DNA of 62,896 nt, the filler included, from Trichosphaerium sp. ATCC 40318 (lineage: Eukaryota; Protista; Tubulinea): the NCBI GenBank assembly GCA_038496445.1. It is 3 parts of 3 records of this genome, joined end to end, with 100 filler letters (N's around TTAATTAATTAA, not from the genome) between each part and the next. Parts side by side here need not be neighbours in the genome. Positions count along the whole stretch, not along the records: positions 1 to 26,745 come from JALMLS010000419.1; 2 more parts are not named here. One strand, written 5' to 3'. A model generated the notes under the pieces. That model was not told the DNA's origin and did not search any database. It saw only the letters and a list, made by a program, of their open reading frames with translations. Made by a program: the position numbers and the translations under genes. This document shows, piece after piece, positions 5,601 through 25,508 of the stretch. How positions within the stretch are numbered: the first letter of the stretch is position 1; each line of letters opens with the position of its first letter.

Positions 5601-6810
5601 AGTTTTAGCTCTTTTTGAGGACGTGTGGTCATCATTGGGAACGTTTTTTTGTATTGTTTTTTTTGACTTTTTTACTCAATGTGTTATCACTGAACACGGG
5701 CTACTCACTCTACGCTAGGACCATAAAAAACCTGTTTGGGGCATGTACTGTTACAGTTAGAATAAGCTCACAACAATTTCTTTTTCGGCAACGCCGGGAC
5801 CTCGTCGGTGTTTACAATTGTGTTTCTATTATTATAATAACAATGTACACTACTACTAAGTTTTTTTGCAGAGACAAAGGCTATATGGCAAGGTGATTTG
5901 TTGATTAGTTTTTTGTTCAATTGAAAAAAAAAAAGCACGTGTCAAAACGTTTCGAGCAGAAGAGTACGAGGAAGTGCCCTCTTTCAGGTTTGAAGGCGTT
6001 TTATGGCTTTTAGCTTATTAAAAAGAATTTCTTTACTATAAACGTACCTGTGGTTCGGATAAGTGTTAGTAGAGTACTGCGAAAGGGTGGATGAACCGCA
6101 GTATTTTTTTCTTTACTGCTGAAGTTTTCGTCTGAATACATGCCTATGTCTATACATGTGTAGCTTGTATGCCATCGCTTCGGAGTTGCTTTGTGTAAGG
6201 AAACGTGTCTATTCATTTCAATAATTAATAAGCAGGACTCCAGTGTGACGTAATCATCATCACGTGACGTGTGTATTGAACTTCGTAGCAAAAAAAGATC
6301 TCTACGCACCACCCCCGAAGTTTATCTTTCCTTTTTCACAGGTGTTATTCTTGTATGCAAGCGTAGGTTCGTATTAGAGCGACCGGGAAACAACAGCCAG
6401 AAAGAAAAAGTGAAAAAAAACTAAAAGCGCTCCGATAGGAAGTTGTTTTATAATGCTCTGAGGTACACTACTGGGTCTGCTTACTCCGGTGAAAACTCAC
6501 TACATGTTTGTAGCACGCTTGCTCTACAAAGTATGGGACACTGTGTGAAACAGTTTTATGAGGAGATTGTACCACTTTCAGCAGTGCTAGACAGTTGTGG
6601 TCAATGCCAATACAATGTAAACGGAGTTGTAATTAATACACTCGCCTTGACTCCCTGAAGCAAAAAACATTTACCTAATAAAATGACGTGAGTTTCTTTT
6701 GATGGTTGGGTTTGTATGTTATTGTACTTTATCAATATGTATTTCACGTGCCACTTTTTGTGGTTCTTTGCTATTGATTTTCAAAAAAGGCGAGCAAATT
6801 TTGTTGCAAT

Positions 6811-6926
6811 TAGATCAGTTCTTCTGAGATCCCAATCTGCAACTACGACGTTCTTTGGGAGGTAAGGAACACATCTGTCCCTGACAGATAGCTCAGGCGC
6901 AGAGCGAGCGTGTGTGGTTTATTTAC
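6811..6926. repeat. Split direct repeat B2 of the Ngaro element
   Basis: TAGATCAGTTCTTCTGAG...GTGGTTTATTTAC, repeated at 7126-7241. Confidence 0.95.
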
Positions 6927-7017
6927 ATAGCGAACACGTTCGCAAATGAAAAGAAAAATGTACAAAAACATAAAAAGAATTTTTAAAAAAAAAATTTTAG
7001 GGTGCGGTGGGAGGGTG

Positions 7018-7241
7018 ATTTCTACTCGCTATCTGAAGAGTTGTTGTTGTTATTGCTGTCAATTTGTCGTCGGATCTCTGGTCTATCCTGTTCAAACGTC
7101 TGAAATGTGCTTCATGTTCAGTCATTAGATCAGTTCTTCTGAGATCCCAATCTGCAACTACGACGTTCTTTGGGAGGTAAGGAACACATCTGTCCCTGAC
7201 AGATAGCTCAGGCGCAGAGCGAGCGTGTGTGGTTTATTTAC
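7018..7241. repeat. Split direct repeats A2 (7018-7125) and B1 (7126-7241), abutting
   Basis: A2 matches 11749-11856 and B1 matches 6811-6926; junction ...AGTCAT|TAGATC... Confidence 0.95.
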
Positions 7242-7246
7242 CCATG

Positions 7247-8322
7247 TCAATCTTCAAGCCACAGTTGAGGTTGACCTCCCTCCCCAAAAACATCGTAGAC
7301 GTTTGTCTTTCCTTGTAACAAACGTTGTGCCATAAGCTTTGGCACTATTAATCTATCTTCTCTGCTGTGTACAATATAAATATTGTACGCGTCTGAACTC
7401 CAGTCTCCTATGTATTTGATCCATTGTTCAGACACTCCTGCTGCTGCCGCATATGTGGCTCCGCCTCTTCTGTATGAGTGTTCTGCGTATTTTGTAGCGT
7501 CTCCACAAACCTTCTCTATTTGTTGTTTTGTCCATGTGACAAATTTGCTGTAATACTAATCCATCTGTTGCCTGATTTGTAACGCATCAAAGAGCGTGTT
7601 CTTGCTGGCTTTATTCTCTTCATGAGGGTATCTATCGCTTGTACCGGGCAAAGTACTTGTCCATCTAGTTTGGTGAAAGGTATCACGTGTTTTCTTTCTC
7701 TAAAGCGTATTGTCTTTGTTTTCCTTAGTGTGAACCACCATGTGTTATTCTCTTTGTCCATGTTTGAAGCTGATATATGTCTTAAGATGTCAAAGTCCGT
7801 TGTTTTCCTTGGAACTAGGTTTCCTATTCGTAAGAAACCCCAGAACGCTATCAATGCTCCTGTCCAATATACCAAGTCTCTATCCAGTCGTAGATCTATA
7901 TTTTGCCTAATTTGTAGTAAAATTGCTGGTGTTATCGGTCGCTTCCGTTCGACCTTTATACCTAAAGTCGATCGTAAACTACGTAGCATATCGTAGTATT
8001 GTATACAATCTGTGTGTGGGTCGTTATATCCTAAACGCTTGCAGAGCCACAACCAATGTGACAGATACACTCTTATTGTATCCGGGAGTAGCCCTTTGCT
8101 TGTGGGTGTTTCTTTCGCCCACATTGCTATAACTAATTGCAAATTTTTCTTTGAGATTGGCATCCACTCTTCTTCTGGTACCCCTAGTGTGATTAACGCT
8201 AGAATGACCGCTGTAATTGCTGATTTGCGGTTGTTGTTTGTGCTTTCAGGATACGCCGAACGTAATATCTTTGCTCGTTTTTGTTCAACTATCTGATTAA
8301 AATCTATAAAAGCAAAAATTAT
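7247..8322 (-). pseudogene. Tyrosine recombinase of the Ngaro element, frameshifted near 7550 in this copy
   Basis: AFWGFLRIGNL (catalytic Arg), LRKTKT and LCPVQA in 7516-8163. After a frame change it continues KFVTWTKQQIEKVCGDATKYAEHSYRRGGAT...IGDWSSDAYNIY (HxxR, W, Tyr). The frame is open from 8322 with no ATG until 8163. Confidence 0.88.
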
Positions 8323-9923
8323 TTAATAAAACGACCGTTTACATTCTGAAAACCCCGTTTTCCAGCAGCCTCTCTAAACACGTTCCACTTAAACCTACTC
8401 AGCGCGTCGGCAATAACGTTGTCTTTTGATGCTATCCAGTTTGTTTCTAACCGGAAACCTAAAGTGGCTGACCACAGATGGATATCGTATATCATTTTCA
8501 TCGCTGTTTTGTTCTTTATCACGAGTTTGTTTATGGCTGCTACCACCCCTGTGTTGTCCACCCACATATTTGCTACCACTTTATTTCTAAAGTGAAAACG
8601 CCATTCTTTAACTGCCATCCACACTGCGTATAACTCTTTAATAGTTATATGCCAAAGTTTTTCTTTCCCTGTGAAGGTATGGATCAGCCATCTTCCTTCG
8701 AAAAAGGCTGCTGCCGCTAAGGTGGACGCATCTGTTTGCAGGGATCCCTTTACCAGGGGCAAAGGTTGTAGCAATATCGCCTTGCCATCCCACATGTCCA
8801 TCATTAAGTTCCACCACATCAGATCCTTACGCATATGTTTTGTCGTAAAGATCCATTGTTCGTTGTTAGTTGCTCCTCGCATGCCGTCGTATATGCGCCT
8901 AAGATATGTGTGTCCACCATACACTACCTGTGCCGCAAAGTTGAGCGTTCCCGTGAGCTGCATCCATTTTCGTAATTTCGCCGATTTTTGTTTCAAGAAC
9001 CAAGCTATGAGTTTTTTGATCTTGTTACGCTTTCTTTCTGTTAATGTGATAGTTCTGTTTGCCATATCAAACTTGAGACCCAAAAAGGTCATCACCTGCT
9101 TCGGTCCTTCACATTTTTCTGACGTCATTTCAAATCCAAGTTTGGTCAATAAATTAACCAAAACTTCTAGCGCGTATTTTGCTTCTTCTGGTGATCCGGC
9201 TATGATTAACCAATCATCTAAATAGACAACATGAAAGCATATGCCCATGCTAGCGAAATATCGTGAAACTATGCTCATAAGGCGCACAAAAAGTTCTGGA
9301 GCGCCATTCCAACCGAAAGGAAGTCTACCATCGCAGTAGTATTTTCCATTCCATTCAAAACCAATGACATCATGGTCGTCGGGGTGTACTGGTACCATAC
9401 GGTACGCACAGTACATATCTGCTTTCGCCAGCCACAACTGTCCAGAATGGTCGCGTATGAAGGTGATGGCGTCTTTGAGTGCTGACAGCGTGAATTTAGG
9501 CGGAGGGAGAGCCAAATCGTTGATAGACAGTCCGATTGGCAGGTTTAAACAAACTATCTTTCTAATTTTGTTGCAAAACGCTCCGTTTTCGTCAAACTTG
9601 GGTATAGCGGCTATTTTGTTACATCTACGTATTTCTTTTGCTACATAAATCCAACCCTTGTTAGTTTCTTTTTCTACATCTTCGTTCACGAATTTTTTCC
9701 ATTGTTTACAGGTGTCACTGTTTTTAATCTGCAAGGTTGACACCTTCGTACCTGCAGGAACAATACGTACGCCTGTGCGAAGCCAGGAGGCAAGCCAAGG
9801 CCAATCAGGATCTTTGCTAAAAAGTTCTTGCCAGAGGTTAAAGCGTTGTGACATAACTGCTACTGAGTAAGGTAAAGCTTTTTTATTACTAACACTATTG
9901 ACCCTGACCTTTGCCTGTAATTG
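8319..9923 (-). CDS. Reverse transcriptase-RNase H of the Ngaro element (first ATG 9854; frame open from the gag stop)
   Basis: KADMYCAYRMVPV, LPFGWNGAP, YLDD, FLGL; RNaseH TDAS, ELYAV, WVDN, ADALSR. Confidence 0.95.
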   Translation of the reverse strand, partial: QLQAKVRVNSVSNKKALPYSVAVMSQRFNLWQELFSKDPDWPWLASWLRTGVRIVPAGTKVSTLQIKNSDTCKQWKKFVNEDVEKETNKGWIYVAKEIRRCNKIAAIPKFDENGAFCNKIRKIVCLNLPIGLSINDLALPPPKFTLSALKDAITFIRDHSGQLWLAKADMYCAYRMVPVHPDDHDVIGFEWNGKYYCDGRLPFGWNGAPELFVRLMSIVSRYFASMGICFHVVYLDDWLIIAGSPEEAKYALEVLVNLLTKLGFEMTSEKCEGPKQVMTFLGLKFDMANRTITLTERKRNKIKKLIAWFLKQKSAKLRKWMQLTGTLNFAAQVVYGGHTYLRRIYDGMRGATNNEQWIFTTKHMRKDLMWWNLMMDMWDGKAILLQPLPLVKGSLQTDASTLAAAAFFEGRWLIHTFTGKEKLWHITIKELYAVWMAVKEWRFHFRNKVVANMWVDNTGVVAAINKLVIKNKTAMKMIYDIHLWSATLGFRLETNWIASKDNVIADALSRFKWNVFREAAGKRGFQNVNGRFIK

Positions 9924-11748
9924 TCAGGTTCGTCTAGGCGATGGACATCCTGCTATCCAGTGTCCAGAGTTACTGCAGTTGAAGCACACATGTTCCATGA
10001 TGCAGTTGCCAGTTTTGTTGAAGCGGCAGTTGTTGCTGGCGATGATGTTCGCGTGGGAGCAGGCCATGTGGATGTTTTTAATACTCCATGGGTTGCGAGC
10101 GCTTGTTTTTTGCGCATTACGCAATTGTTGAGCTGTAGGACGTGGACGCTGAGGGCGCTGTGGTCTCTGAGGTTGTTGCGGTTGGTATTGCTGTTGTTGC
10201 TGGTAAGGTTGTTGCTGAAAACCCTGTTGCAGTGGCCCTGTTTGTACTCTACCTAGGTACATGCTTAAAAATAGAGAAGGAACCGTGTAGCTAGCGCTAG
10301 TTCTTTCCCAGTAATAACGAACGGCTCTATCAAAAACAAGTACCTGTGCCCATGGGTATAGACAAAGTAATTGCTTGAGCTGGTCCTGATACGCTTGGTG
10401 TCTGTTGGCCATAGCCTGCGTAAGTAGCTTGTGTTTGACGTTCTCGTTTATTTGGGCCTCTATAGTGACCAGCCTGGCCATAAGGTCTGGGGCGCTTGTT
10501 ACGGAGAGAGGTTTTGACGCTTTTGTTAACGATCGTGCTGATGAGCTATGAAGGTATGTGAGTGGTGCCACATACTCTGGAAAGTAAATAGGTTTGTTAA
10601 TACCAAACCTGACTACTCCTGAAAAAAGCGGAGCGTCCGCAAAAAGCATTCGCCATTTTTTGGCTTCTTCAGCACTTACCGCTGTAAGCTGCTGCTGCGA
10701 TACGAAAGTTGAGCCTAAAGGGTATGCTGTCCCGCCTGGCGCTGCAACTGACGTGTTAGGGAAAGCGGAGTTTAAATTAAAGCTACCTGGCGCGTTGCTA
10801 GGTGAAGGAGGAGGCGCAGACGGCGCAGTGTTACTTCCCTGCGTATTTTGCTGCAATACTGGGTTACCCGCATTCGCTTGGGCTTGAGGGTTGCTCGCTG
10901 GCACCTGTACCCCTATTTTGGACAGAAAAACATCAGCCTTTTGACGTGCGAGGTTGACGTTGTTAACCACCTGTTTAGCTTTCTCCCAGGTGGATTTAAA
11001 CGTACCAGGCTGTGCCTGTGGCTGCTGCATAACAGGGCTAGTCGTCGCAGAGGGAGCTGTCTGAGGAGCTGTGGCTTGTGTATGAGGTGCTTGAGCCTGC
11101 GCCTGCTGTTGTAATAACCTCTTGCGAATGTCTTCTTGTCGTTGTTTTGCACGAAGGGCTTCATATCGACTTTTTTCCTTTTCTGCTGCATCTAAAGCCT
11201 CCTGTAGCTGGGAAACCAGGGCATCGTTCGCCTTTTGTAAGGACTTGATTACATCTGACGATTCCAATACATTATCCGCTGTATGGAAATCCCCTGTGCC
11301 GTCTTTGAGTTCGCCAGTCGATGTGGCAAAATCATCATCTGAATCCGCGTCAGTATCAGAGGAAGAAGAGAGATTAGGCTTAGGTTTTTTGCCAAACGGT
11401 GAAAAGTTTTTAAAACGGCCTAAAAACGTAGAAGGAGTAGGGTTTGCGTCCAAAAGAATTTCGCGTAGTTTTTTCGATCTTGCTTTGTTAATTGAGAGAG
11501 AGAACTTGGTACCGATGTCGTCCCAGTTTGGGTACGATCCACCTTGGATTGATGCTGCCACGTGTTGGAAAATTTCTACTAAATCTTCCTTCGTCTTTTT
11601 CTCCATTGCATTCCAAAGGTTAACCCCTCTTATACGTCTGTCCGGATCTAAGTTATTGCGAAAGAATTCTACCAGTTGTTCCTATTGGTGGTTTTGTTGG
11701 ATCATTGCGGTCCTCTTCCGTAATTACATAACTGAATCCTTCTGTCAT
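9924..11748 (-). CDS. Gag-like ORF1 of the Ngaro element (ORF 11606-9924, probably extended by a 7-codon exon 11748-11728)
   Basis: WAQVLVFDRAVR motif typical of DIRS/Ngaro gag; C-terminal C..C..C..HVCFNCSNSGHWIAGC zinc knuckle (CX2CX4HX4C); Q/P-rich linker. Confidence 0.85.
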
Positions 11749-11856
11749 ATTTCTACTCGCTATCTGAAGAGTTGTTGTTGTTATTGCTGTCAATTTGTCG
11801 TCGGATCTCTGGTCTATCCTGTTCAAACGTCTGAAATGTGCTTCATGTTCAGTCAT
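11749..11856. repeat. Split direct repeat A1 of the Ngaro element
   Basis: Identical to 7018-7125. Confidence 0.95.
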
Positions 11857-12040
11857 AATTGCCGGCTAGTCAAATAAAACTTTGTACACCCTCTATATTG
11901 TATTGTTATTTCAAGCCCTTTTGTTGTAATTACTTTTAGGAACGTTATGATAAAGAAACAAACAAAAGGCGCAGTGAGGGTGCGGAATGTTCGAAAGTTA
12001 GCTGTTCAAGACAACTAAGCAATCTCGTTTATTTGCATTA

Positions 12041-12658
12041 TCAGTATTCTACTCCAGGTGTGCGGTAGCAAGTACAGTAAAATCCTCTATCTACATAGTC
12101 TCTGTATCGCAGGAAGTTAACCATGTGACAGTTCGCTTTAGATCCAAAAGGTGGAAGAGGAAATGTTACAATACAACAAATACAAAAGTACGGTTGAGGC
12201 TCTTGATGAGCATTTGTTGCTGGAGGGAAAGTGCTGTTTGATGGTGGTGATGCGTATGGAGGAAATGTGCCGTTTGTTGAAGGTGGGAACGTGCCATTTG
12301 TTGACGGCGGAAAAGTGCCATTCATTGATGGTGGAAAGGTACCGTTGGTGGATGGAGGAAATGTGCCATTTGTTGATGTTGGGAACGTTCCATTTGTTGT
12401 AGATGGAGGAAATGTGCCATTAGTTGATGGTGGGTATGTACTGTTTGATGCGTATGGAGGGAATGTTCCATTCGATGGTGGAGTTGGAGGGAAAGTGGCA
12501 TTTATTGATGGAGCGGTTCCATTTGTTGGTAGTTCTGTTGTTTCAGCATTCGAATTTGAGCTTCTACGTTCATTGCGCTCACGCGCACAAGAGGTTGATA
12601 AAACTGTTGCAATCACAGACAACAGTAAAACGATAGCTAACTCATGTTTAAAAAGCAT
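12041..12658 (-). CDS. Secreted Pro/Thr-rich protein with tandem NGTFPPST repeats and Cys-rich C-terminus
   Basis: Signal peptide MLFKHELAIVLLLSVIATVLS; about 12 degenerate 8-aa (24-nt) repeats; C-terminal CICC..C..CTC. Confidence 0.75.
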   Translation of the reverse strand: MLFKHELAIVLLLSVIATVLSTSCARERNERRSSNSNAETTELPTNGTAPSINATFPPTPPSNGTFPPYASNSTYPPSTNGTFPPSTTNGTFPTSTNGTFPPSTNGTFPPSMNGTFPPSTNGTFPPSTNGTFPPYASPPSNSTFPPATNAHQEPQPYFCICCIVTFPLPPFGSKANCHMVNFLRYRDYVDRGFYCTCYRTPGVEY

Positions 12659-13386
12659 TGGAGTTGTTGCTTGTACGGTTGATACTAAAGTGAATAGACT
12701 GTTTAGGAATTTTTGTGAACCACAGAAAGTGCATTTTAGGGAATACACTATCACGTGATAGAAAAAAAATGCAAGATGCATTTTGGTTACAAAACAGTGT
12801 ACTAGGTTGCTTGCACTCAGATTTGCAACAATTGCTTTGTACTAAGTTTATTTCCTAGCGAGAAAATAAGGAAACAAAGTGTTATCACTCTTGTCAACTG
12901 TGGAAACACAAAATAAAACTCAAGTATTTCCACTTGAAATAACACACTGTGTTGATCAATTTGCTATTAACATGTAGTACCCTTTTTTTTAATTCGAACA
13001 GTCTTAGTTCCAAAAGTTCCGAGTTTCTCCAGAGACTACACTCAAAAAAAAGGCATTGTTTGCTTGTTCGGATTCATATCAATTCGTTCAATATTGGCTT
13101 GATAAACTCATCTTTTCAGATATTCTCTTATTGTTAAAAAAGGCTCAAAAAAGTTCGAGTTTTCTCGAGAAATTATGTGTACTGGAAACGACACTGAAGT
13201 ACTTTGTTTGTTTCATTTAGTTGTAGACTAAACAACGTTATACTAATGCCATAATCACCAAATATGGCATTAAGAGTAAAGTAAACTGAACCTTGAAAAC
13301 AGATAGCTCAAACAACCAATGGTGAGTAATATCGTGTTTTGTAAAAAAAAAGTAAAGTACACCTTTATTCTTTACAATTGCAGGTG

Positions 13387-14298
13387 CTACATTTTTTGAT
13401 CCGTTGTGACTTCATATTGAGGTACATTATTTACAACGCGTCTGGTAACATCTCTTGAAATCTTACTACAATAGCGAATATACAACTTCTTTAAGAACTT
13501 TTTTTTTTCATCTTGATCCAATAAGTAGTTAATACCTTTATCACAAATACCTTCACAACCAGTCAAATCAATGCTAAAAGCGCCAACAAGGCCCATGATA
13601 CCTTTGCTTGTTATTCTTTCACAGTACCTCAATACAATACTTTTGACTCCTGACAATGCCAACAATCCATCGTCCTCTATTGGAGCACTGCAAAGATTAA
13701 TTGTATGAACACCTGATAGAGCCTTATAACCCTCTACAGTTATATCAGTGTTGTATCCACTCAAGTTTATTGTATGAACACCAGAAAGAGCTTTAAGGCC
13801 TTTGTCCGTTATTTTACAACAGTACCCTAGGTCAATCGTGTGAACACCATGAAGTTGTTTAAGACAATCATCTGTTACATAATCAAGTGCAATAAAAGAA
13901 CGTCGTCTGGTTTCTCTTCGATTCAGGTCAATTGTATGGACACCAGCGAGTGCCTTGAATCCATTTGGTGTTATTTTTATAGGGCGGGTGTAAAAAGTAC
14001 ATCTTAGAACAAGGTTACGGACACCAGCAAGTTTGGAAAGGTCTTCATCTGTTGCTCTGTATAATCGTAAAATAATTTTAGTATTTTTTAACAGTGGACT
14101 ACCGGACAGTATATCTAGTTTGTGTTTTACAGTATTTGATACTCTAATACAATGATAACCAACATGATTCTGGATTACATCAAATAACAGTTTGCATGTG
14201 AATGAAGATGCTATCTGACTTCTTTTTCCCATAAACCTGAAAATAATAGCAAGAATTTCTGGAGGTGTATCTAAAAAGGTATCCTGTTGTCTTGACAT
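13387..14298 (-). CDS. F-box plus leucine-rich repeat protein, intronless
   Basis: N-terminal FLDTPPEILAIIFRFM...SFTCK F-box-like motif; repeats GVHTIDLxxCxxITDxGLKAL. Confidence 0.8.
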   Translation of the reverse strand: MSRQQDTFLDTPPEILAIIFRFMGKRSQIASSFTCKLLFDVIQNHVGYHCIRVSNTVKHKLDILSGSPLLKNTKIILRLYRATDEDLSKLAGVRNLVLRCTFYTRPIKITPNGFKALAGVHTIDLNRRETRRRSFIALDYVTDDCLKQLHGVHTIDLGYCCKITDKGLKALSGVHTINLSGYNTDITVEGYKALSGVHTINLCSAPIEDDGLLALSGVKSIVLRYCERITSKGIMGLVGAFSIDLTGCEGICDKGINYLLDQDEKKKFLKKLYIRYCSKISRDVTRRVVNNVPQYEVTTDQKM

Positions 14299-15068
14299 GA
14301 TGGATTTCTTTGTCTCTTGTTTCAAAGTAAGGTTGTAAAATGAATCATAGTTAAACAATAACGCACTTTATCACACGTAGAACTTTTGTTTCAAGGTCTT
14401 GAGAACGGTATATTACGTAGAAATCTTCGCTAACAAAAAAAAATTTAAAAGCTGCACGTGCTGCTAAGAGAAAAACAAGAAAAACAATGCGTAACCCTCT
14501 GCAGCAACGAGAGAATACGTTTTAACACGATAGACAGGAATAAACGCGTAGTATAGTGTGGTAGACTGTAAATCAGTTTTTGAGACTTAAATTGATACTC
14601 GTTTGGAGGCCAGCACGCGAAAGAAACAGTTTGTTTGATTAAATCGTCGCTCAACTGACAAAGTTTGTATCATTGGTTTAACTAAGCGTACAATTAATGC
14701 TGTGATATCCTCCAAAAGTATCTTCAGAAGCGACAGCCGGCAGTACTGAAATGTGATTAACACCAAACAGATTGGTTCTTTGTCAGTCAACGCGTAAATG
14801 TTACTTAACAACAAATAAATAAGTACTAAACAATATCTCTGAGTAATTCTTATGTTCATGTATGTTTTCAGATCTATGCACATTGTAGGAAACGGAGTAC
14901 AATCAAAGGTAGAACGAGAATATCAACACAGCACCTCCCGCTAGTGTACTATTTATTCAAGGGTCCAAAATGGGATTGCATTTCACACTCACGTTTTCGA
15001 AGGCACTTGTTACAATTGATGAAGAATAAATTGTAAGGGGTAGCTGAACAAGTTCATGTTTATTTGTT

Positions 15069-16605
15069 TTACAATCTAAGAAGCACTTTTACTTCAACAT
15101 CTTCTTTCATAATACATTTAAGACTCAACTCGCCGTCAGGTCTCCAACGTTGAAGTGTTCCCTCTTTTTTACCATCTTTATAATTACATTGTGAAGCAAG
15201 TTGTCCATTAAGATGCCATGTCTTGAAAGTGTTGGAACGTTTTCCTTTCCTATAAATAACAGACGATTTTATTTGGCCATTATCATACCAGACCTGTTGT
15301 AATCCATTCTTTTCATCACTCCTCATAAAACACGTGCCTTTGATATTACCACTACTATACCACCATTTCAAATCACCTTCTTTTTTACCATTGTAGTAAA
15401 TGCATTGTCTCGAAAGAACACCATTGTCGTGAAATTGTTGATATTGTCCTTCTGGCTTATTATTCTTTGCTGTGTATCGCTCTTGTATTTCTCCATTTGA
15501 GTGCCATTGCTCACATAAACCCTCTTCTTTATCACGTTTGTAATACTTTTGTACTCGCAGTTGGCCATTCTCATGCCATTCTTTGAATACACCTTCTCTT
15601 TTATTGTTTTTCGAAAAGTACTTCATTTGAAGCGCTCCTGTCTTGTACCATTGTTTGGTTTTACCATTTCTCATACCATTACGCATTCTACAACGTATAT
15701 GACGTTTTCCATCATCGTAAAAGTGCTGATAAATGCCATGGTAGTCTCCGTTTTTCTTTGTGAATTTTTGAGTCATTTTACCGTCTTTGTTGAATACTTG
15801 ACATAACCCGTCTTCTTTTCCCTCTCTGTAGGAGTATATGGTCGCTAAGGTTCCATTACTATACCAAGTTCGGCCATAGCCATTCTTCAATCCGTTTCCC
15901 ATACGAAACTTTGCTTGCTGTTCCCCATTCTTATACCAATGGCGACGAACTCCGTTTTCTTCAGAATCAATAAAACGTGTTCTCACAGCAAGTTTACCAT
16001 TATCATGCCAGCGAAACCACGTGCCATGTTTTTCGAGAGAATCATTAAAAAGAGTACGTGTAGCTGCTTTCTTAGATAATAAGGACCTAAAACAATTTAT
16101 TTAGAATACAAGGTTTTAGAGAAAGTCGGACTTGATGTTCGAAATGTTCGAGAACTTTTTTAGATTTCCCAAAAAAATTCGAAAACAATTTCTAAAACGC
16201 ACCATTTGGTAAAAACTTCCTTGTCAAGCGACACTATATATTGTTGTATTTCTGGTGGTAATAACAGAACGGGTAAATCGTCTTTAAGATTTTTTAGAGA
16301 CAAGAACTGTCTTCTATCGCCTTTTCTGCAAAAAACGTATTAGACGCGTAAAGCGAGTATTCTCCACGTTTTTCCGTCCTTCCACGGAAAAACAAACTGA
16401 CTTTCGAGCAACCGCAGCGCGAAAGATGCTGTTGGCGTAAAGCTAGCACGAAAAACAAATTGTTGACGTACTTGAGTTCTTTAGAAGTTGCGTAGCTTAC
16501 CATTTATTGCTCTTGGGGTAAAAATACTTTGTCGGTTTTTGCCAGCAAAAATCCTTGTTCACTAAAATCCTCCAAACTACGCAAAAGTTCTCTAAAAACT
16601 ACCAT
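15069..16605 (-). CDS. MORN-variant (YwqK-like) repeat protein with N-terminal F-box-like segment, multi-exon
   Basis: More than 12 repeats of WYxNGxxxxxxxYKxGKxEG. The upstream exon LLLPPEIQQYIVSL joins in frame via intron 16087-16202; further 5' exons are approximate. Confidence 0.75.
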
Positions 16606-23644: not shown

Positions 23645-24161
23645 CGTGGAAGGTCTGACGAGCGTAATTTAATGGTGCTGATCGCTATTAGGAATAATTG
23701 TGCGTTTATCCGCTTTTGTAGTAAACAATTATTAAGAGCGGTGCGTACGCGGTATCCACGCTGAGTTGCAATGGTTTTGAACGTTTAAAAAGTAGTGCGA
23801 AAAGTTAAGCCATTCTTAGTCGTAAAATAGACCTGACGTTACTATAAGTGACATATTTGGCGTAACGAGTTGTATGAGTGATACATGTAAGTATGTTCAT
23901 GTTAAAAGAAGTTGTAATAAACGAAAATAAAATAGTGTGATAAATGGCATACTAACGTTATTTTCGCGTAGACAGGATGATTGATGACGTTTGAAAGTAG
24001 TTTGGGGTTTTGTTGAAAAAAATAAAACTAGTATTTGACAAAACATGTCCAAACAGGAGAAACTAAAGTCTACAAAGCTTTGTCGAAAAACGCCAGTATC
24101 GTTAAGCTTCAACAACAACTTAACGCGTAGATAAAGTTCGTTTTTGTACTGCAACTTGCGC

Positions 24162-25508
24162 ATGATTTTTTGCAACCTTAGAAACCCTTTTCTACGCGTT
24201 GCAACGCTACTAGTAGTACTTATTAGCTACGTCTATACCGGAAACGCGCAAATAATCAAAAAAATACCCGTAATAGACGCAAATGAGGTTAGTTTTGTGG
24301 AATTCCAAGAGAAATGGGCTTCCGAAGGTATTCCAGTGATCATAAGGAACGCTATACCAGAGATCGGAAAGGAAAGTGGTCAAACTCCTCTACAGTTCAT
24401 AGACACTGAATGTGGTCATAGACCATTAATGACTGAGTGCAACGACAACGACATTGACGTTAAATACTACGCCGAAGAAACAGTTGGAAACGAGTGGGGA
24501 GCATTGATCGACGCAGATCTAGAAGAACTCAACATAGAAACTGTAGAACAGTTGATAGCAACTCAGAAGATACTATCAGTTGCAGGTGGAAGACAGTTAT
24601 ACCTACACGACACTGCTATGTCTTGTCTTTGTCCTGCTTTGTTCAACAAGATTAGAATGCCAAAATATTTTTATGCTGATTTTCAGCTCACATATGAGCT
24701 TCTAGATAGAGTTATAGAAGTACTTGATAGTGACCCTGATTATAAAGAAGCAGTAAATAACGCATCAGGTAGTTATAGGAATAGGTATGGATTTACTGTA
24801 AAGAAAATGAGAGCAGAAGCTCATCCTTCTTTGTTTATTGGTCCAAAAAGTACTCTGACTAGACTTCATGTTGATTCACGTATGACACAGTTCGGAATGG
24901 CTCTCCTTGAAGGAAGAAAACATTGGAGAGTTACTAAGCACAGTACTGGAAGGTATTTGTATCCAACAGAAATAGACAAGAGAGCATCGTATGTCGATTA
25001 CGGATTCTTCAAAGTTGATCTATTTTCTCCCGATCTCGAGAAGTTTCCTGATTTGGAAAAAGCTACTATTTACGATGCTGTACTAAAACCAGGTGAGTTT
25101 ATGTATATACCAGCTGGCGCACCACATCAAGTTGTAAACTTGGATGATACAGTAGCTTGGTCCTGCAATTTTGTAGATCATAACAACCTTAAATATCACA
25201 TTGATAGTTTGAATGATATGCCAAAAGCAGCTAAGGCTATTCATAAAGCACAAGGATTTGATTCGCTAAACTCATTAAATGCAAAGATACTACAGACTCT
25301 TATCAAAGAAAAACTATTTACATATCCCGAAGCGAAAGAGCGGAATATAATGGAATATTGGAGTTCATCAAAGATTACAAATCTTTTGGCATTACAAGAC
25401 AGTGACCACGTCGCTTATGCACTAAACCAAGTGCTCAGTGACATCACTCTACAAGAAGTTGATAGATATGATGAGGAAGATGTCATTGATTTTGAAGAAG
25501 ATCCTTAA
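24162..25508 (+). CDS. JmjC (cupin) 2OG-Fe(II) oxygenase with N-terminal signal/anchor, intronless
   Basis: LFIGPKSTLTRLHVD, GRKHW, LKPGEFMYIPAGAPHQVVNL (HxD...H triad); hydrophobic N-terminus LRVATLLVVLISYVYTGNA. Confidence 0.88.
   Translation: MIFCNLRNPFLRVATLLVVLISYVYTGNAQIIKKIPVIDANEVSFVEFQEKWASEGIPVIIRNAIPEIGKESGQTPLQFIDTECGHRPLMTECNDNDIDVKYYAEETVGNEWGALIDADLEELNIETVEQLIATQKILSVAGGRQLYLHDTAMSCLCPALFNKIRMPKYFYADFQLTYELLDRVIEVLDSDPDYKEAVNNASGSYRNRYGFTVKKMRAEAHPSLFIGPKSTLTRLHVDSRMTQFGMALLEGRKHWRVTKHSTGRYLYPTEIDKRASYVDYGFFKVDLFSPDLEKFPDLEKATIYDAVLKPGEFMYIPAGAPHQVVNLDDTVAWSCNFVDHNNLKYHIDSLNDMPKAAKAIHKAQGFDSLNSLNAKILQTLIKEKLFTYPEAKERNIMEYWSSSKITNLLALQDSDHVAYALNQVLSDITLQEVDRYDEEDVIDFEEDP

What the first reader, a model, noticed from the sequence alone, without database searches (positions are those of the whole stretch)
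9852..9935. Gag-pol fusion by UGA-CAA-UUA stop-codon readthrough in a YR retrotransposon
Seen: gag ends ...CCT AGA CGA ACC TGA (9926-9924), followed by CAA TTA CAG GCA..., 23 stop-free codons in the same frame leading to the RT ATG at 9854. Known: stop-CARYYA is the canonical tobamovirus-type leaky-stop context, and DIRS/Ngaro ORFs are usually described as overlapping in different frames. Inference: programmed readthrough produces Gag-RT-RH and sets its stoichiometry. I am not aware of this being described for Ngaro elements.
Basis: partly seen in the sequence, partly recalled or inferred. Interest (0 to 1): 0.75.

Follow-up and report, generated by a model that had tools for sequence, protein, structure and literature searches.

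The report
Conserved leaky stop joins Gag and RT
A tyrosine-recombinase (Ngaro-like) retrotransposon, in what is probably an early-diverging fungus, keeps its gag and reverse-transcriptase genes in one reading frame separated by a single UGA; all 11 diverged sister lineages in the same genome do the same, so the reverse transcriptase is very probably made as a Gag-RT fusion by occasional read-through of that stop.

Summary
On the minus strand, gag (11606-9927) ends in TGA (9926-9924) followed by CAATTA. Twenty-three sense codons then lead, in the same frame, to the RT/RNase H ORF (9854-8322).

The stop is not a copy-specific mutation. All 17 related copies in this genome, from 11 lineages with RT identity down to 31-36%, have TGA (never TAA or TAG) in frame with RT and a 17-24 codon open linker.
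- The linkers hold 0 stops in 235 codons. About 14 are expected, and 14 and 19 occur in the other two frames.
- Intact lineages C341 and C85 have no ATG before RT residues 62 and 101.
- Codons beside the stop differ synonymously between C396 and C341.
- The RT-YR junction changes frame between lineages, which serves as an internal control.

None of 12 more distant elements from other sources has this layout. Their gag lies in another frame or is fused to RT.

CARYYA follows the stop in only three lineages, and a 3' RNA structure is not supported overall.

Programmed UGA read-through is the best explanation, at about 0.75. It is inferred from comparison, not shown experimentally. I found no description of it for DIRS/Ngaro elements in the papers I could read, but the founding Ngaro paper was not available.

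The parts
11749..11856 (-). A1, the 5' member of the split direct repeats
   Evidence: 100% identical over 108 nt to A2 at 7018-7125
9927..11606 (-). gag ORF, 560 codons, Q/P-rich
   Evidence: ORF list and translation. It is 58% identical to the gag of sibling C341 and 31-40% identical to other lineages
9939..9989 (-). CCHC zinc knuckle at the Gag C-terminus
   Evidence: Pfam zf-CCHC, residues 540-556, E 0.009, below the cut-off. The C-x2-C-x4-H-x4-C pattern is visible in the translation and is kept in lineages C341, C398, C26, C368 and C38
9924..9926 (-). gag stop codon TGA, the proposed read-through site
   Evidence: TGA sits at the homologous place in all 17 copies and 11 lineages
9918..9923 (-). 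CAATTA hexamer, a CARYYA-type (type I) leaky-stop context
   Evidence: It is identical in C341 and reads CAATCA in the C398 group. The motif definition comes from PMC3542737
9855..9923 (-). 23-codon open linker between the stop and the first ATG of the RT ORF
   Evidence: Linkers of the 11 lineages hold 0 stops in 235 codons, against 14 and 19 in the other two frames. LPYSVA is kept against C341 with silent changes in 4 of 6 codons
8322..9854 (-). RT/RNase H ORF, 511 codons, stop TAA at 8319-8321
   Evidence: RVT_1 E 1.7e-18. Weak RNase H-like hits. Matches to retroviral and Ty3 RT chains in the PDB
7519..8322 (-). N-terminal part of the tyrosine recombinase, in the -1 frame relative to RT
   Evidence: It aligns with the intact YR ORFs of the siblings
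7250..7555 (-). C-terminal part of the tyrosine recombinase (H-x-x-R and the catalytic Tyr region), in a different frame from the N-terminal part; the frame changes at about 7532-7545
   Evidence: Siblings C341, C398, C26, C30 and C85 have one continuous YR ORF. The C398 YR hits Phage_integrase at E 1.3e-5
7124..7241 (-). B1 repeat
   Evidence: 100% identical over 118 nt to B2 at 6809-6926
7018..7125 (-). A2 repeat
   Evidence: 100% identical to A1
6809..6926 (-). B2 repeat, the 3' end of the element; a 91-nt spacer (6927-7017) separates it from A2

Best explanation
The 5-kb element at 6809-11856 (minus strand) is a Ngaro-like tyrosine-recombinase retrotransposon. Its full-length RNA is translated from the gag AUG. 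Most ribosomes stop at the gag UGA and make Gag. A minority decode the UGA with a near-cognate tRNA and continue through the 23-codon linker into RT/RNase H, making a Gag-RT/RH fusion. This sets a low Pol:Gag ratio, as in gammaretroviruses. In this copy and its two nearest lineages the stimulator is probably the hexamer right after the stop (CAATTA or CAATCA, the tobamovirus/yeast CARYYA type), with no need for RNA structure. Shown here: the layout, its conservation, the coding constraint on the linker, and the lack of an RT start codon in sister lineages. Inferred: that the bypass is translational read-through, its efficiency, and the role of the hexamer.
For: (1) All 17 copies in 11 lineages of the family in this genome have TGA, in frame with RT, followed by a 17-24 codon linker. 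Seven lineages have both ORFs intact, with 386 or more open codons 5' of the stop and 507 or more from RT position 1.
(2) The seven lineages with intact ORFs form one very deep group in the RT tree (99/99 support, path length about 2.7 substitutions per site; still one group with 48 further proteins). The stop has therefore been kept as TGA although one transition would give TAA. RT ORFs mostly end in TAA or TAG.
(3) The linkers hold 0 stops in 235 codons. The expectation is 14.3, and the other two frames hold 14 and 19.
(4) Between C396 and C341, the codons for P-R-R-T before the stop and for LPYSVA after it differ by silent changes, while TGACAATTA is identical at 9 of 9 bases. The linker is therefore translated.
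(5) The first in-frame ATG after the stop lies at RT residue 62 in C341 and residue 101 in C85, both with intact ORFs. In the decayed copies C38 and C509 it lies at residues 43 and 134. In all four it lies inside conserved sequence.
(6) Internal control: the RT-YR junction uses all three relative frames among six lineages.
(7) LTR retrotransposons in the same genome use overlapping -1 frames ending in TAA or TAG, so the in-frame TGA is a property of this element family and not of the host.
(8) The C398 group has at least 5 separate insertions that are 99.4-99.7% identical, and all carry the TGA. Elements with the stop therefore transposed recently.
(9) CARYYA stimulates read-through of UGA as well as UAG, and works in S. 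cerevisiae (PMC3542737; PMC3609751).
(10) The position after the stop is C in 6 lineages, A in 4, T in 1 and G in none.
Against: There are no RNA, ribosome-profiling or protein data for this organism, so read-through is not shown. CARYYA is present in only 3 of 11 lineages, and the other contexts (CTGCCA, AATGTA, AAACTT, AACGTG, AATCTC, CTGTTC, TGCTTC) match no defined motif. A 3' structure is not enriched overall (Mann-Whitney p = 0.13 against control windows); only C398 and C30 stand out. In the fungal LTR element Tca2, an in-frame gag-UGA-pol junction did not drive read-through in yeast reporters (PMC2194720), so an in-frame stop alone does not prove the mechanism. The window copy does have an ATG at the RT start, and its YR is frame-broken, so this particular copy may be inactive.
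Confidence: 0.75

Rival explanations
1. RT/RH is translated separately from gag. Possible routes are its own ATG (9854) on a subgenomic, internally promoted or spliced mRNA, or termination followed by re-initiation. On this view the in-frame relation is incidental.
For: The window copy and four other lineages (C398, C26, C368; C30 and C41 have an ATG inside the linker) have an in-frame ATG at or just before the RT start. Tca2 has an internal promoter at its gag-pol junction (PMC2194720). Pyrimidine-rich runs ending in AG occur near the end of the linker in C396, C341, C398 and C38 (read). YR appears to need some such route, because its conserved N-terminus lies upstream of its first Met.
Against: Separate initiation explains none of the following: the invariant frame, the invariant TGA, the stop-free linker (0 stops where 14 are expected), or the amino-acid conservation starting directly after the stop. 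C341 and C85, both with intact ORFs, have no ATG before RT residues 62 and 101.
Confidence: 0.13
2. The stop is bypassed in frame by a non-standard route: selenocysteine insertion at UGA, or an unknown mechanism as proposed for Tca2.
For: The host genome has a tRNA-Sec candidate with anticodon UCA, scoring 61.7 bits against a gathering score of 47. The stop is always UGA. Tca2 needs a bypass that is still unexplained.
Against: No SECIS-like match in 6500-12000, even at E up to 10, and none in the whole window at gathering score. ARAGORN does not call the tRNA. Sec at a linker has no evident role. UGA is also the leakiest stop, which explains its conservation more simply.
Confidence: 0.05
3. 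The TGA is a nonsense mutation in a dead copy of an element whose ancestor had one fused gag-RT ORF.
For: This copy has a frame break in YR. Fused gag-RT ORFs exist in distant relatives (L064).
Against: The TGA is at the homologous place in all 17 copies and 11 lineages, including recently amplified ones. The terminal repeats of this copy are 100% identical.
Confidence: 0.01
4. TGA is a sense codon in this organism's nuclear code.
For: None beyond the conserved in-frame TGA itself.
Against: There is no other in-frame TGA in the 1,071 codons of gag plus RT, nor in the long ORFs of the siblings, the LTR elements or the HSP70 genes. TGA does end some ORFs: the C85 RT ORF and window ORF 12041-12781.
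Confidence: 0.01

Closest known systems
Gammaretrovirus (MuLV) gag-pol read-through
   Same: gag and pol are in one frame, separated by one stop codon. A minority of ribosomes read through and make Gag-Pol, which sets the ratio of structural protein to enzyme (summarised in PMC3542737).
   Different: MuLV uses UAG-G plus a compact pseudoknot 8 nt downstream. Here the stop is UGA, no significant structure follows it in this copy (z +0.2 to +0.4), and the element has no protease or DDE integrase. It uses a tyrosine recombinase.
Tobamovirus type I leaky stop (UAG-CAA-UUA; CARYYA)
   Same: The six bases after the stop are identical to those of TMV (CAA UUA). The motif also acts on UGA and also works in yeast.
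   Different: The stop is UGA rather than UAG. The setting is a retrotransposon gag-pol junction, not an RNA-virus replicase. Only 3 of 11 lineages of the family carry the motif.
Candida albicans Tca2 (Ty1/copia) gag-UGA-pol
   Same: A fungal retroelement with gag and pol in frame, separated by UGA. Pol is made from the gag-pol RNA (PMC2194720).
   Different: Tca2 is an LTR element with a putative pseudoknot, and its junction did not drive read-through in S. cerevisiae reporters. Its context is not CARYYA.
Classical Ngaro / DIRS elements (animal and fungal)
   Same: The order gag, RT/RH, YR; split direct repeats A1...B1-A2-B2; no methyltransferase, protease or integrase (PMC3783388, PMC9210276).
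   Different: Published descriptions and all 12 outside elements examined here have gag in a different frame from RT (overlapping by 25-270 nt in 4 of them, not overlapping in the others) or, in one case, fused into a single ORF. None has an in-frame single stop.

Membership tests
Ngaro-like YR retrotransposon | pol ORF with reverse transcriptase plus RNase H | tested here: met
   RVT_1 E 1.7e-18. RNase H-like hits are weak, E 0.01-0.02. PDB RT/RH chains match at 3.5e-9
Ngaro-like YR retrotransposon | tyrosine recombinase ORF (R...H-x-x-R...Y) instead of a DDE integrase | tested here: met
   The intact sibling YR (C398) hits Phage_integrase at E 1.3e-5, 25.4 bits, just under the cut-off of 27.1. 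The H-S-Y-R-R-G-G motif is visible in the window copy, whose ORF is frame-broken
Ngaro-like YR retrotransposon | split direct repeats A1 ... B1-A2-B2 | tested here: met
   A1 and A2 are 108 nt and 100% identical; B1 and B2 are 118 nt and 100% identical; B1 abuts A2. A 91-nt spacer between A2 and B2 departs from the textbook picture
Ngaro-like YR retrotransposon | no methyltransferase domain (this separates Ngaro from DIRS and PAT) | tested here: met
   gag, RT/RH and YR fill the interior of the element. No MT family was hit
Ngaro-like YR retrotransposon | RT groups with named Ngaro references rather than with DIRS, PAT or VIPER | tested here: inconclusive
   The clade is sister to unnamed elements with a Ngaro layout, one of which has a GDSL/SGNH fourth ORF. 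No named reference sequences were available
Type I (CARYYA) read-through signal | stop codon followed at once by C-A-R-Y-Y-A | tested here: met
   TGA CAATTA at 9926-9918. The motif also follows the stop in C341 and the C398 group
Type I (CARYYA) read-through signal | measured read-through above background that depends on the hexamer | not testable with these tools
   This needs a reporter assay or ribosome profiling
Type II/III read-through signal (stop plus 3' stem-loop or pseudoknot about 8 nt downstream) | a stable structure beginning about 8 nt after the stop | tested here: not met
   Window copy z is +0.2 to +0.4, and C341 z is +1.1. Only C398 (z -4.2) and C30 (z -2.2) stand out. Overall p = 0.13 against control windows
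Selenocysteine recoding | a SECIS element in the mRNA, and a tRNA-Sec in the host | tested here: not met
   No SECIS match at E up to 10 in 6500-12000 or at gathering score in the window. A tRNA-Sec candidate does exist in the host

The most novel reading that the evidence does not exclude
An old, diversified clade of Ngaro-like tyrosine-recombinase retrotransposons makes its reverse transcriptase only as a Gag-RT fusion, by programmed UGA read-through. This expression strategy has not been described for the DIRS order. Within the clade the stimulatory signal has turned over: a CARYYA hexamer in some lineages, hairpins or still undefined contexts in others. The family would then be a natural series for studying how leaky-stop signals evolve.
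Probability: 0.55. Interest if true: 0.65.

Novelty: new variant of a known kind. Interest (0 to 1): 0.58.

Why it matters
Gag-pol read-through is a textbook strategy of gammaretroviruses and a few LTR elements. Tyrosine-recombinase retrotransposons (DIRS, Ngaro, PAT, VIPER) are consistently described as having overlapping ORFs, and how their RT is expressed is essentially unstudied.

Here one genome supplies 11 diverged lineages that all keep an in-frame UGA. That gives comparative evidence about as strong as sequence alone can provide, with an internal negative control in the RT-YR junction.

If confirmed, three things follow.
- Recoding is extended to a fourth major retroelement order.
- A Gag-RT fusion is shown to be functional without a protease to release RT.
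- There would be a set of natural UGA contexts, some CARYYA and some not matching any defined motif, to test in fungal read-through assays.

Tried and rejected
- **Copy-specific nonsense mutation.** Rejected.
- **TGA as a sense codon.** Rejected, because no other in-frame TGA occurs in the long ORFs.
- **Family-wide 3' RNA structure.** z-scores of the 60 nt after the stop do not differ from those of 154 control windows (p = 0.13). Rfam finds nothing in the element.
- **Close relatives in other organisms.**
  - The word search found RT relatives at 32% identity or less, plus one 52% fragment on a 1.1-kb contig.
  - The metagenome scan found 33% or less.
  - The full HMMER profile search found 37% or less, with P0153 as the nearest outgroup.
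  - The TGA layout could therefore be tested only inside this genome and against 12 distant elements.
- **Host identification.**
  - The JmjC ORF search found nothing.
  - HSP70 is only 63-68% identical to that of animals, fungi and plants alike.
  - The atlas search with Gag was uninformative.
  - At least 57 Zn2Cys6 domains and short introns point to a fungus.
- **Literature.** No held paper links Ngaro or DIRS to read-through. Goodwin & Poulter 2004 is not held, and Poulter & Butler 2015 was not looked up. One search was mis-specified and useless.
Full report
**1. The observation**

All features are on the minus strand.
- A 560-codon ORF starts at 11606 and ends ...CCT AGA CGA ACC TGA, with the stop at 9926-9924.
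- The next six bases, 9923-9918, are CAATTA.
- Twenty-three sense codons follow.
- The ATG at 9854 opens a 511-codon ORF, ending in TAA at 8321-8319, that carries a reverse-transcriptase domain (RVT_1, E 1.7e-18).
- That ORF also gives weak RNase H-like matches and matches retroviral and Ty3 RT chains in the PDB.
- Both ORFs are in the same frame. The first has a CCHC zinc knuckle just before its stop.

**2. What the element is**

- Two pairs of perfect direct repeats bound a 5,048-bp unit. A1 (11856-11749) equals A2 (7125-7018). B1 (7241-7124) equals B2 (6926-6809). B1 abuts A2. This is the split-direct-repeat layout of Ngaro-type tyrosine-recombinase retrotransposons.
- A recombinase follows RT/RH. 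Its C-terminal part carries the H-x-x-R motif. In this copy the ORF changes frame at about 7532-7545.
- Five sister lineages have an uninterrupted ORF, and one of them hits Phage_integrase at E 1.3e-5.
- There is no room for, and no match to, a methyltransferase, protease or DDE integrase.

I file the element as Ngaro-like on structure. Placement against named reference elements could not be tested.

The host genome is 70 Mb in 642 contigs, about 36% G+C in this window. It has short introns and at least 57 fungal-type Zn2Cys6 domains. It is therefore probably an early-diverging fungus. Its HSP70 is only 63-68% identical to anything in the database, so no close relative is available.

**3. Is the stop a private mutation?**

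No. Protein searches of the window's own genome found 17 copies that include the junction. They fall into 11 lineages, whose RT identity to the window copy runs from 71% down to 31-36%.

At the homologous place every copy has the same three features:
- TGA, never TAA or TAG;
- the same frame as RT;
- an open linker of 17-24 codons.

Seven lineages keep both long ORFs intact, with 386 or more open codons 5' of the stop and 507 or more from the RT start. One lineage, the C398 group, has at least five separate insertions that are 99.4-99.7% identical, and all carry the stop. Elements with the stop were therefore transposing recently.

In a maximum-likelihood RT tree the seven lineages with intact ORFs form one group (99/99 support) with a very long internal path, about 2.7 substitutions per site. 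They stay together when 42 of the best profile-search hits and 6 of the earlier outside proteins are added.

**4. Is the linker translated in the gag frame?**

Four observations say yes.
- **No stops in the linker.** The 11 linkers together hold 0 stops in 235 codons. Base composition predicts 14.3, and the other two frames of the same DNA hold 14 and 19.
- **Silent changes next to the stop.** Between the window copy and C341, the codons for P-R-R-T before the stop differ only silently. So do four of the six codons of the conserved LPYSVA after it. TGACAATTA itself is unchanged.
- **No start codon for RT in some lineages.** The first in-frame ATG after the stop lies at RT residue 62 in C341 and residue 101 in C85, both with intact ORFs. 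In the decayed copies C38 and C509 it lies at residues 43 and 134. In all four it is well inside conserved sequence.
- **An internal control.** The RT-to-recombinase junction sits in all three relative frames among six lineages. Frame conservation is therefore specific to the gag-RT junction.

LTR retrotransposons of the same genome have gag and pol overlapping in the -1 frame and ending in TAA or TAG. The host does not impose in-frame TGA on its retroelements.

**5. Relatives elsewhere**

- The closest RT proteins in the large databases are 37% identical or less, apart from one 52% fragment on a contig too short to show the junction.
- I read the gag-RT junction of 12 outside elements.
  - In four (L049, L052, L053, L065) gag lies in another frame and overlaps the RT frame by 25-270 nt.
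  - In seven it lies in another frame without overlap.
  - One (L064) has gag and RT fused in a single ORF.
  - None has an in-frame single stop.
- This agrees with published descriptions, which say that these ORFs frequently overlap (PMC9210276; PMC3783388).

**6. Mechanism**

The best-supported reading is programmed read-through of the gag UGA. It would give mostly Gag and a small fraction of Gag-RT/RH.

For this copy and its two nearest lineages, the hexamer after the stop fits CARYYA (CAATTA, CAATTA, CAATCA).
- This motif is sufficient for read-through in tobamoviruses.
- It also works on UGA and in S. cerevisiae (PMC3542737; PMC3609751).
- Consistent with a motif that needs no structure, the 60-90 nt after the stop are no more structured than shuffled sequence in these two copies (z +0.2 to +1.2).

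The other eight lineages have different contexts. The base after the stop is C in six lineages overall, A in four, T in one and G in none.

Hairpins starting 8-10 nt after the stop stand out only in C398 (z -4.2) and C30 (z -2.2). Over all lineages the junction is not more structured than 154 control windows (p = 0.13). I therefore do not claim a structural stimulator.

**7. Rivals**

- **Separate translation of RT** (own ATG, internal promoter, splicing, re-initiation) is the main rival, at about 0.13. This copy has an ATG, and Tca2 shows that an in-frame gag-UGA-pol junction can carry a promoter and fail to give read-through in reporters (PMC2194720). But separate translation explains neither the invariant frame, the invariant TGA, the stop-free and conserved linker, nor the lineages without an ATG.
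- **Selenocysteine insertion** deserves mention because the host has a convincing tRNA-Sec candidate (61.7 bits against a gathering score of 47, anticodon UCA). No SECIS-like element is found in the element, even at E up to 10.
- **A private nonsense mutation** is contradicted by the data above.
- **A reassigned TGA codon** is also contradicted by the data above.

**8. Novelty and limits**

- Full-text searches for Ngaro or DIRS together with read-through or stop codon found nothing relevant.
- The founding Ngaro paper is not in the library, and the 2015 review was not looked up. An earlier mention cannot be excluded.
- The mechanism belongs to a known kind (gag-pol read-through). Its occurrence as a conserved trait of a clade of tyrosine-recombinase retrotransposons looks like a new variant.
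- All evidence is comparative. No expression data exist for this organism.
- The window copy itself has a frame break in its recombinase, so it may be inactive. That does not bear on the conserved junction.

Noticed in passing
G000:C5:742868-742954 (minus); L099:1501-1587: A tRNA-Sec candidate scores 61.7 bits against a gathering score of 47, with anticodon loop CUUCAAA (anticodon UCA). ARAGORN does not call it. The probably fungal host may use selenocysteine, which is rare in fungi.
   Followed up: partly
window 8300-8325 (minus) and the homologous sites in L004, L006, L007, L009: Just 3' of the RT stop, at least the window copy, C341 and C398 have a pyrimidine-rich run ending in AG. In every lineage read, the conserved N-terminus of the recombinase lies upstream of its first Met, and its frame relative to RT varies. 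In the C398 group it is in the same frame as RT after a single TAA. The recombinase may come from a spliced subgenomic mRNA. This is untested.
   Followed up: partly
window about 7532-7545 (minus): The recombinase ORF of this copy changes frame once, although its terminal repeats are 100% identical. This is either a very recent disabling change or an assembly indel.
   Followed up: partly
L060 and L062 (G000:C160 and C94): LTR retrotransposons of the same genome have gag and pol overlapping by 13-22 nt in the -1 frame, which is a frameshift layout. This contrasts with the in-frame TGA of the Ngaro-like family.
   Followed up: partly
L064 (metagenome contig FXBE01001701.1), 184-2772: A distant relative has gag (with a Cys/His-rich motif) and RT fused in a single uninterrupted ORF. 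Many proteins in the HMMER search also carry 170-660 residues ahead of the RT domain.
   Followed up: partly
window 12041-12781 (minus), repeats at 12211-12474: An ORF just 5' of the element holds a 24-nt tandem repeat, with copies 61-76% identical to the reference copy, that encodes octapeptide repeats. It has no Pfam match.
   Followed up: no
G000, many contigs: Zn2Cys6 hits come in pairs with equal scores on different contigs. C30 and C541 are 99.9% identical over 4.5 kb. The assembly may contain two haplotypes or a recent duplication.
   Followed up: no
window 6927-7017: A 91-nt unique spacer lies between repeats A2 and B2. In the textbook Ngaro layout these two repeats are adjacent.
   Followed up: no
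window 13387-14358, 15069-15986, 24144-25508: Host ORFs flank the element: F-box/LRR, MORN-repeat and JmjC/cupin. The JmjC ORF has no database relative at E 1e-10 or better.
   Followed up: partly
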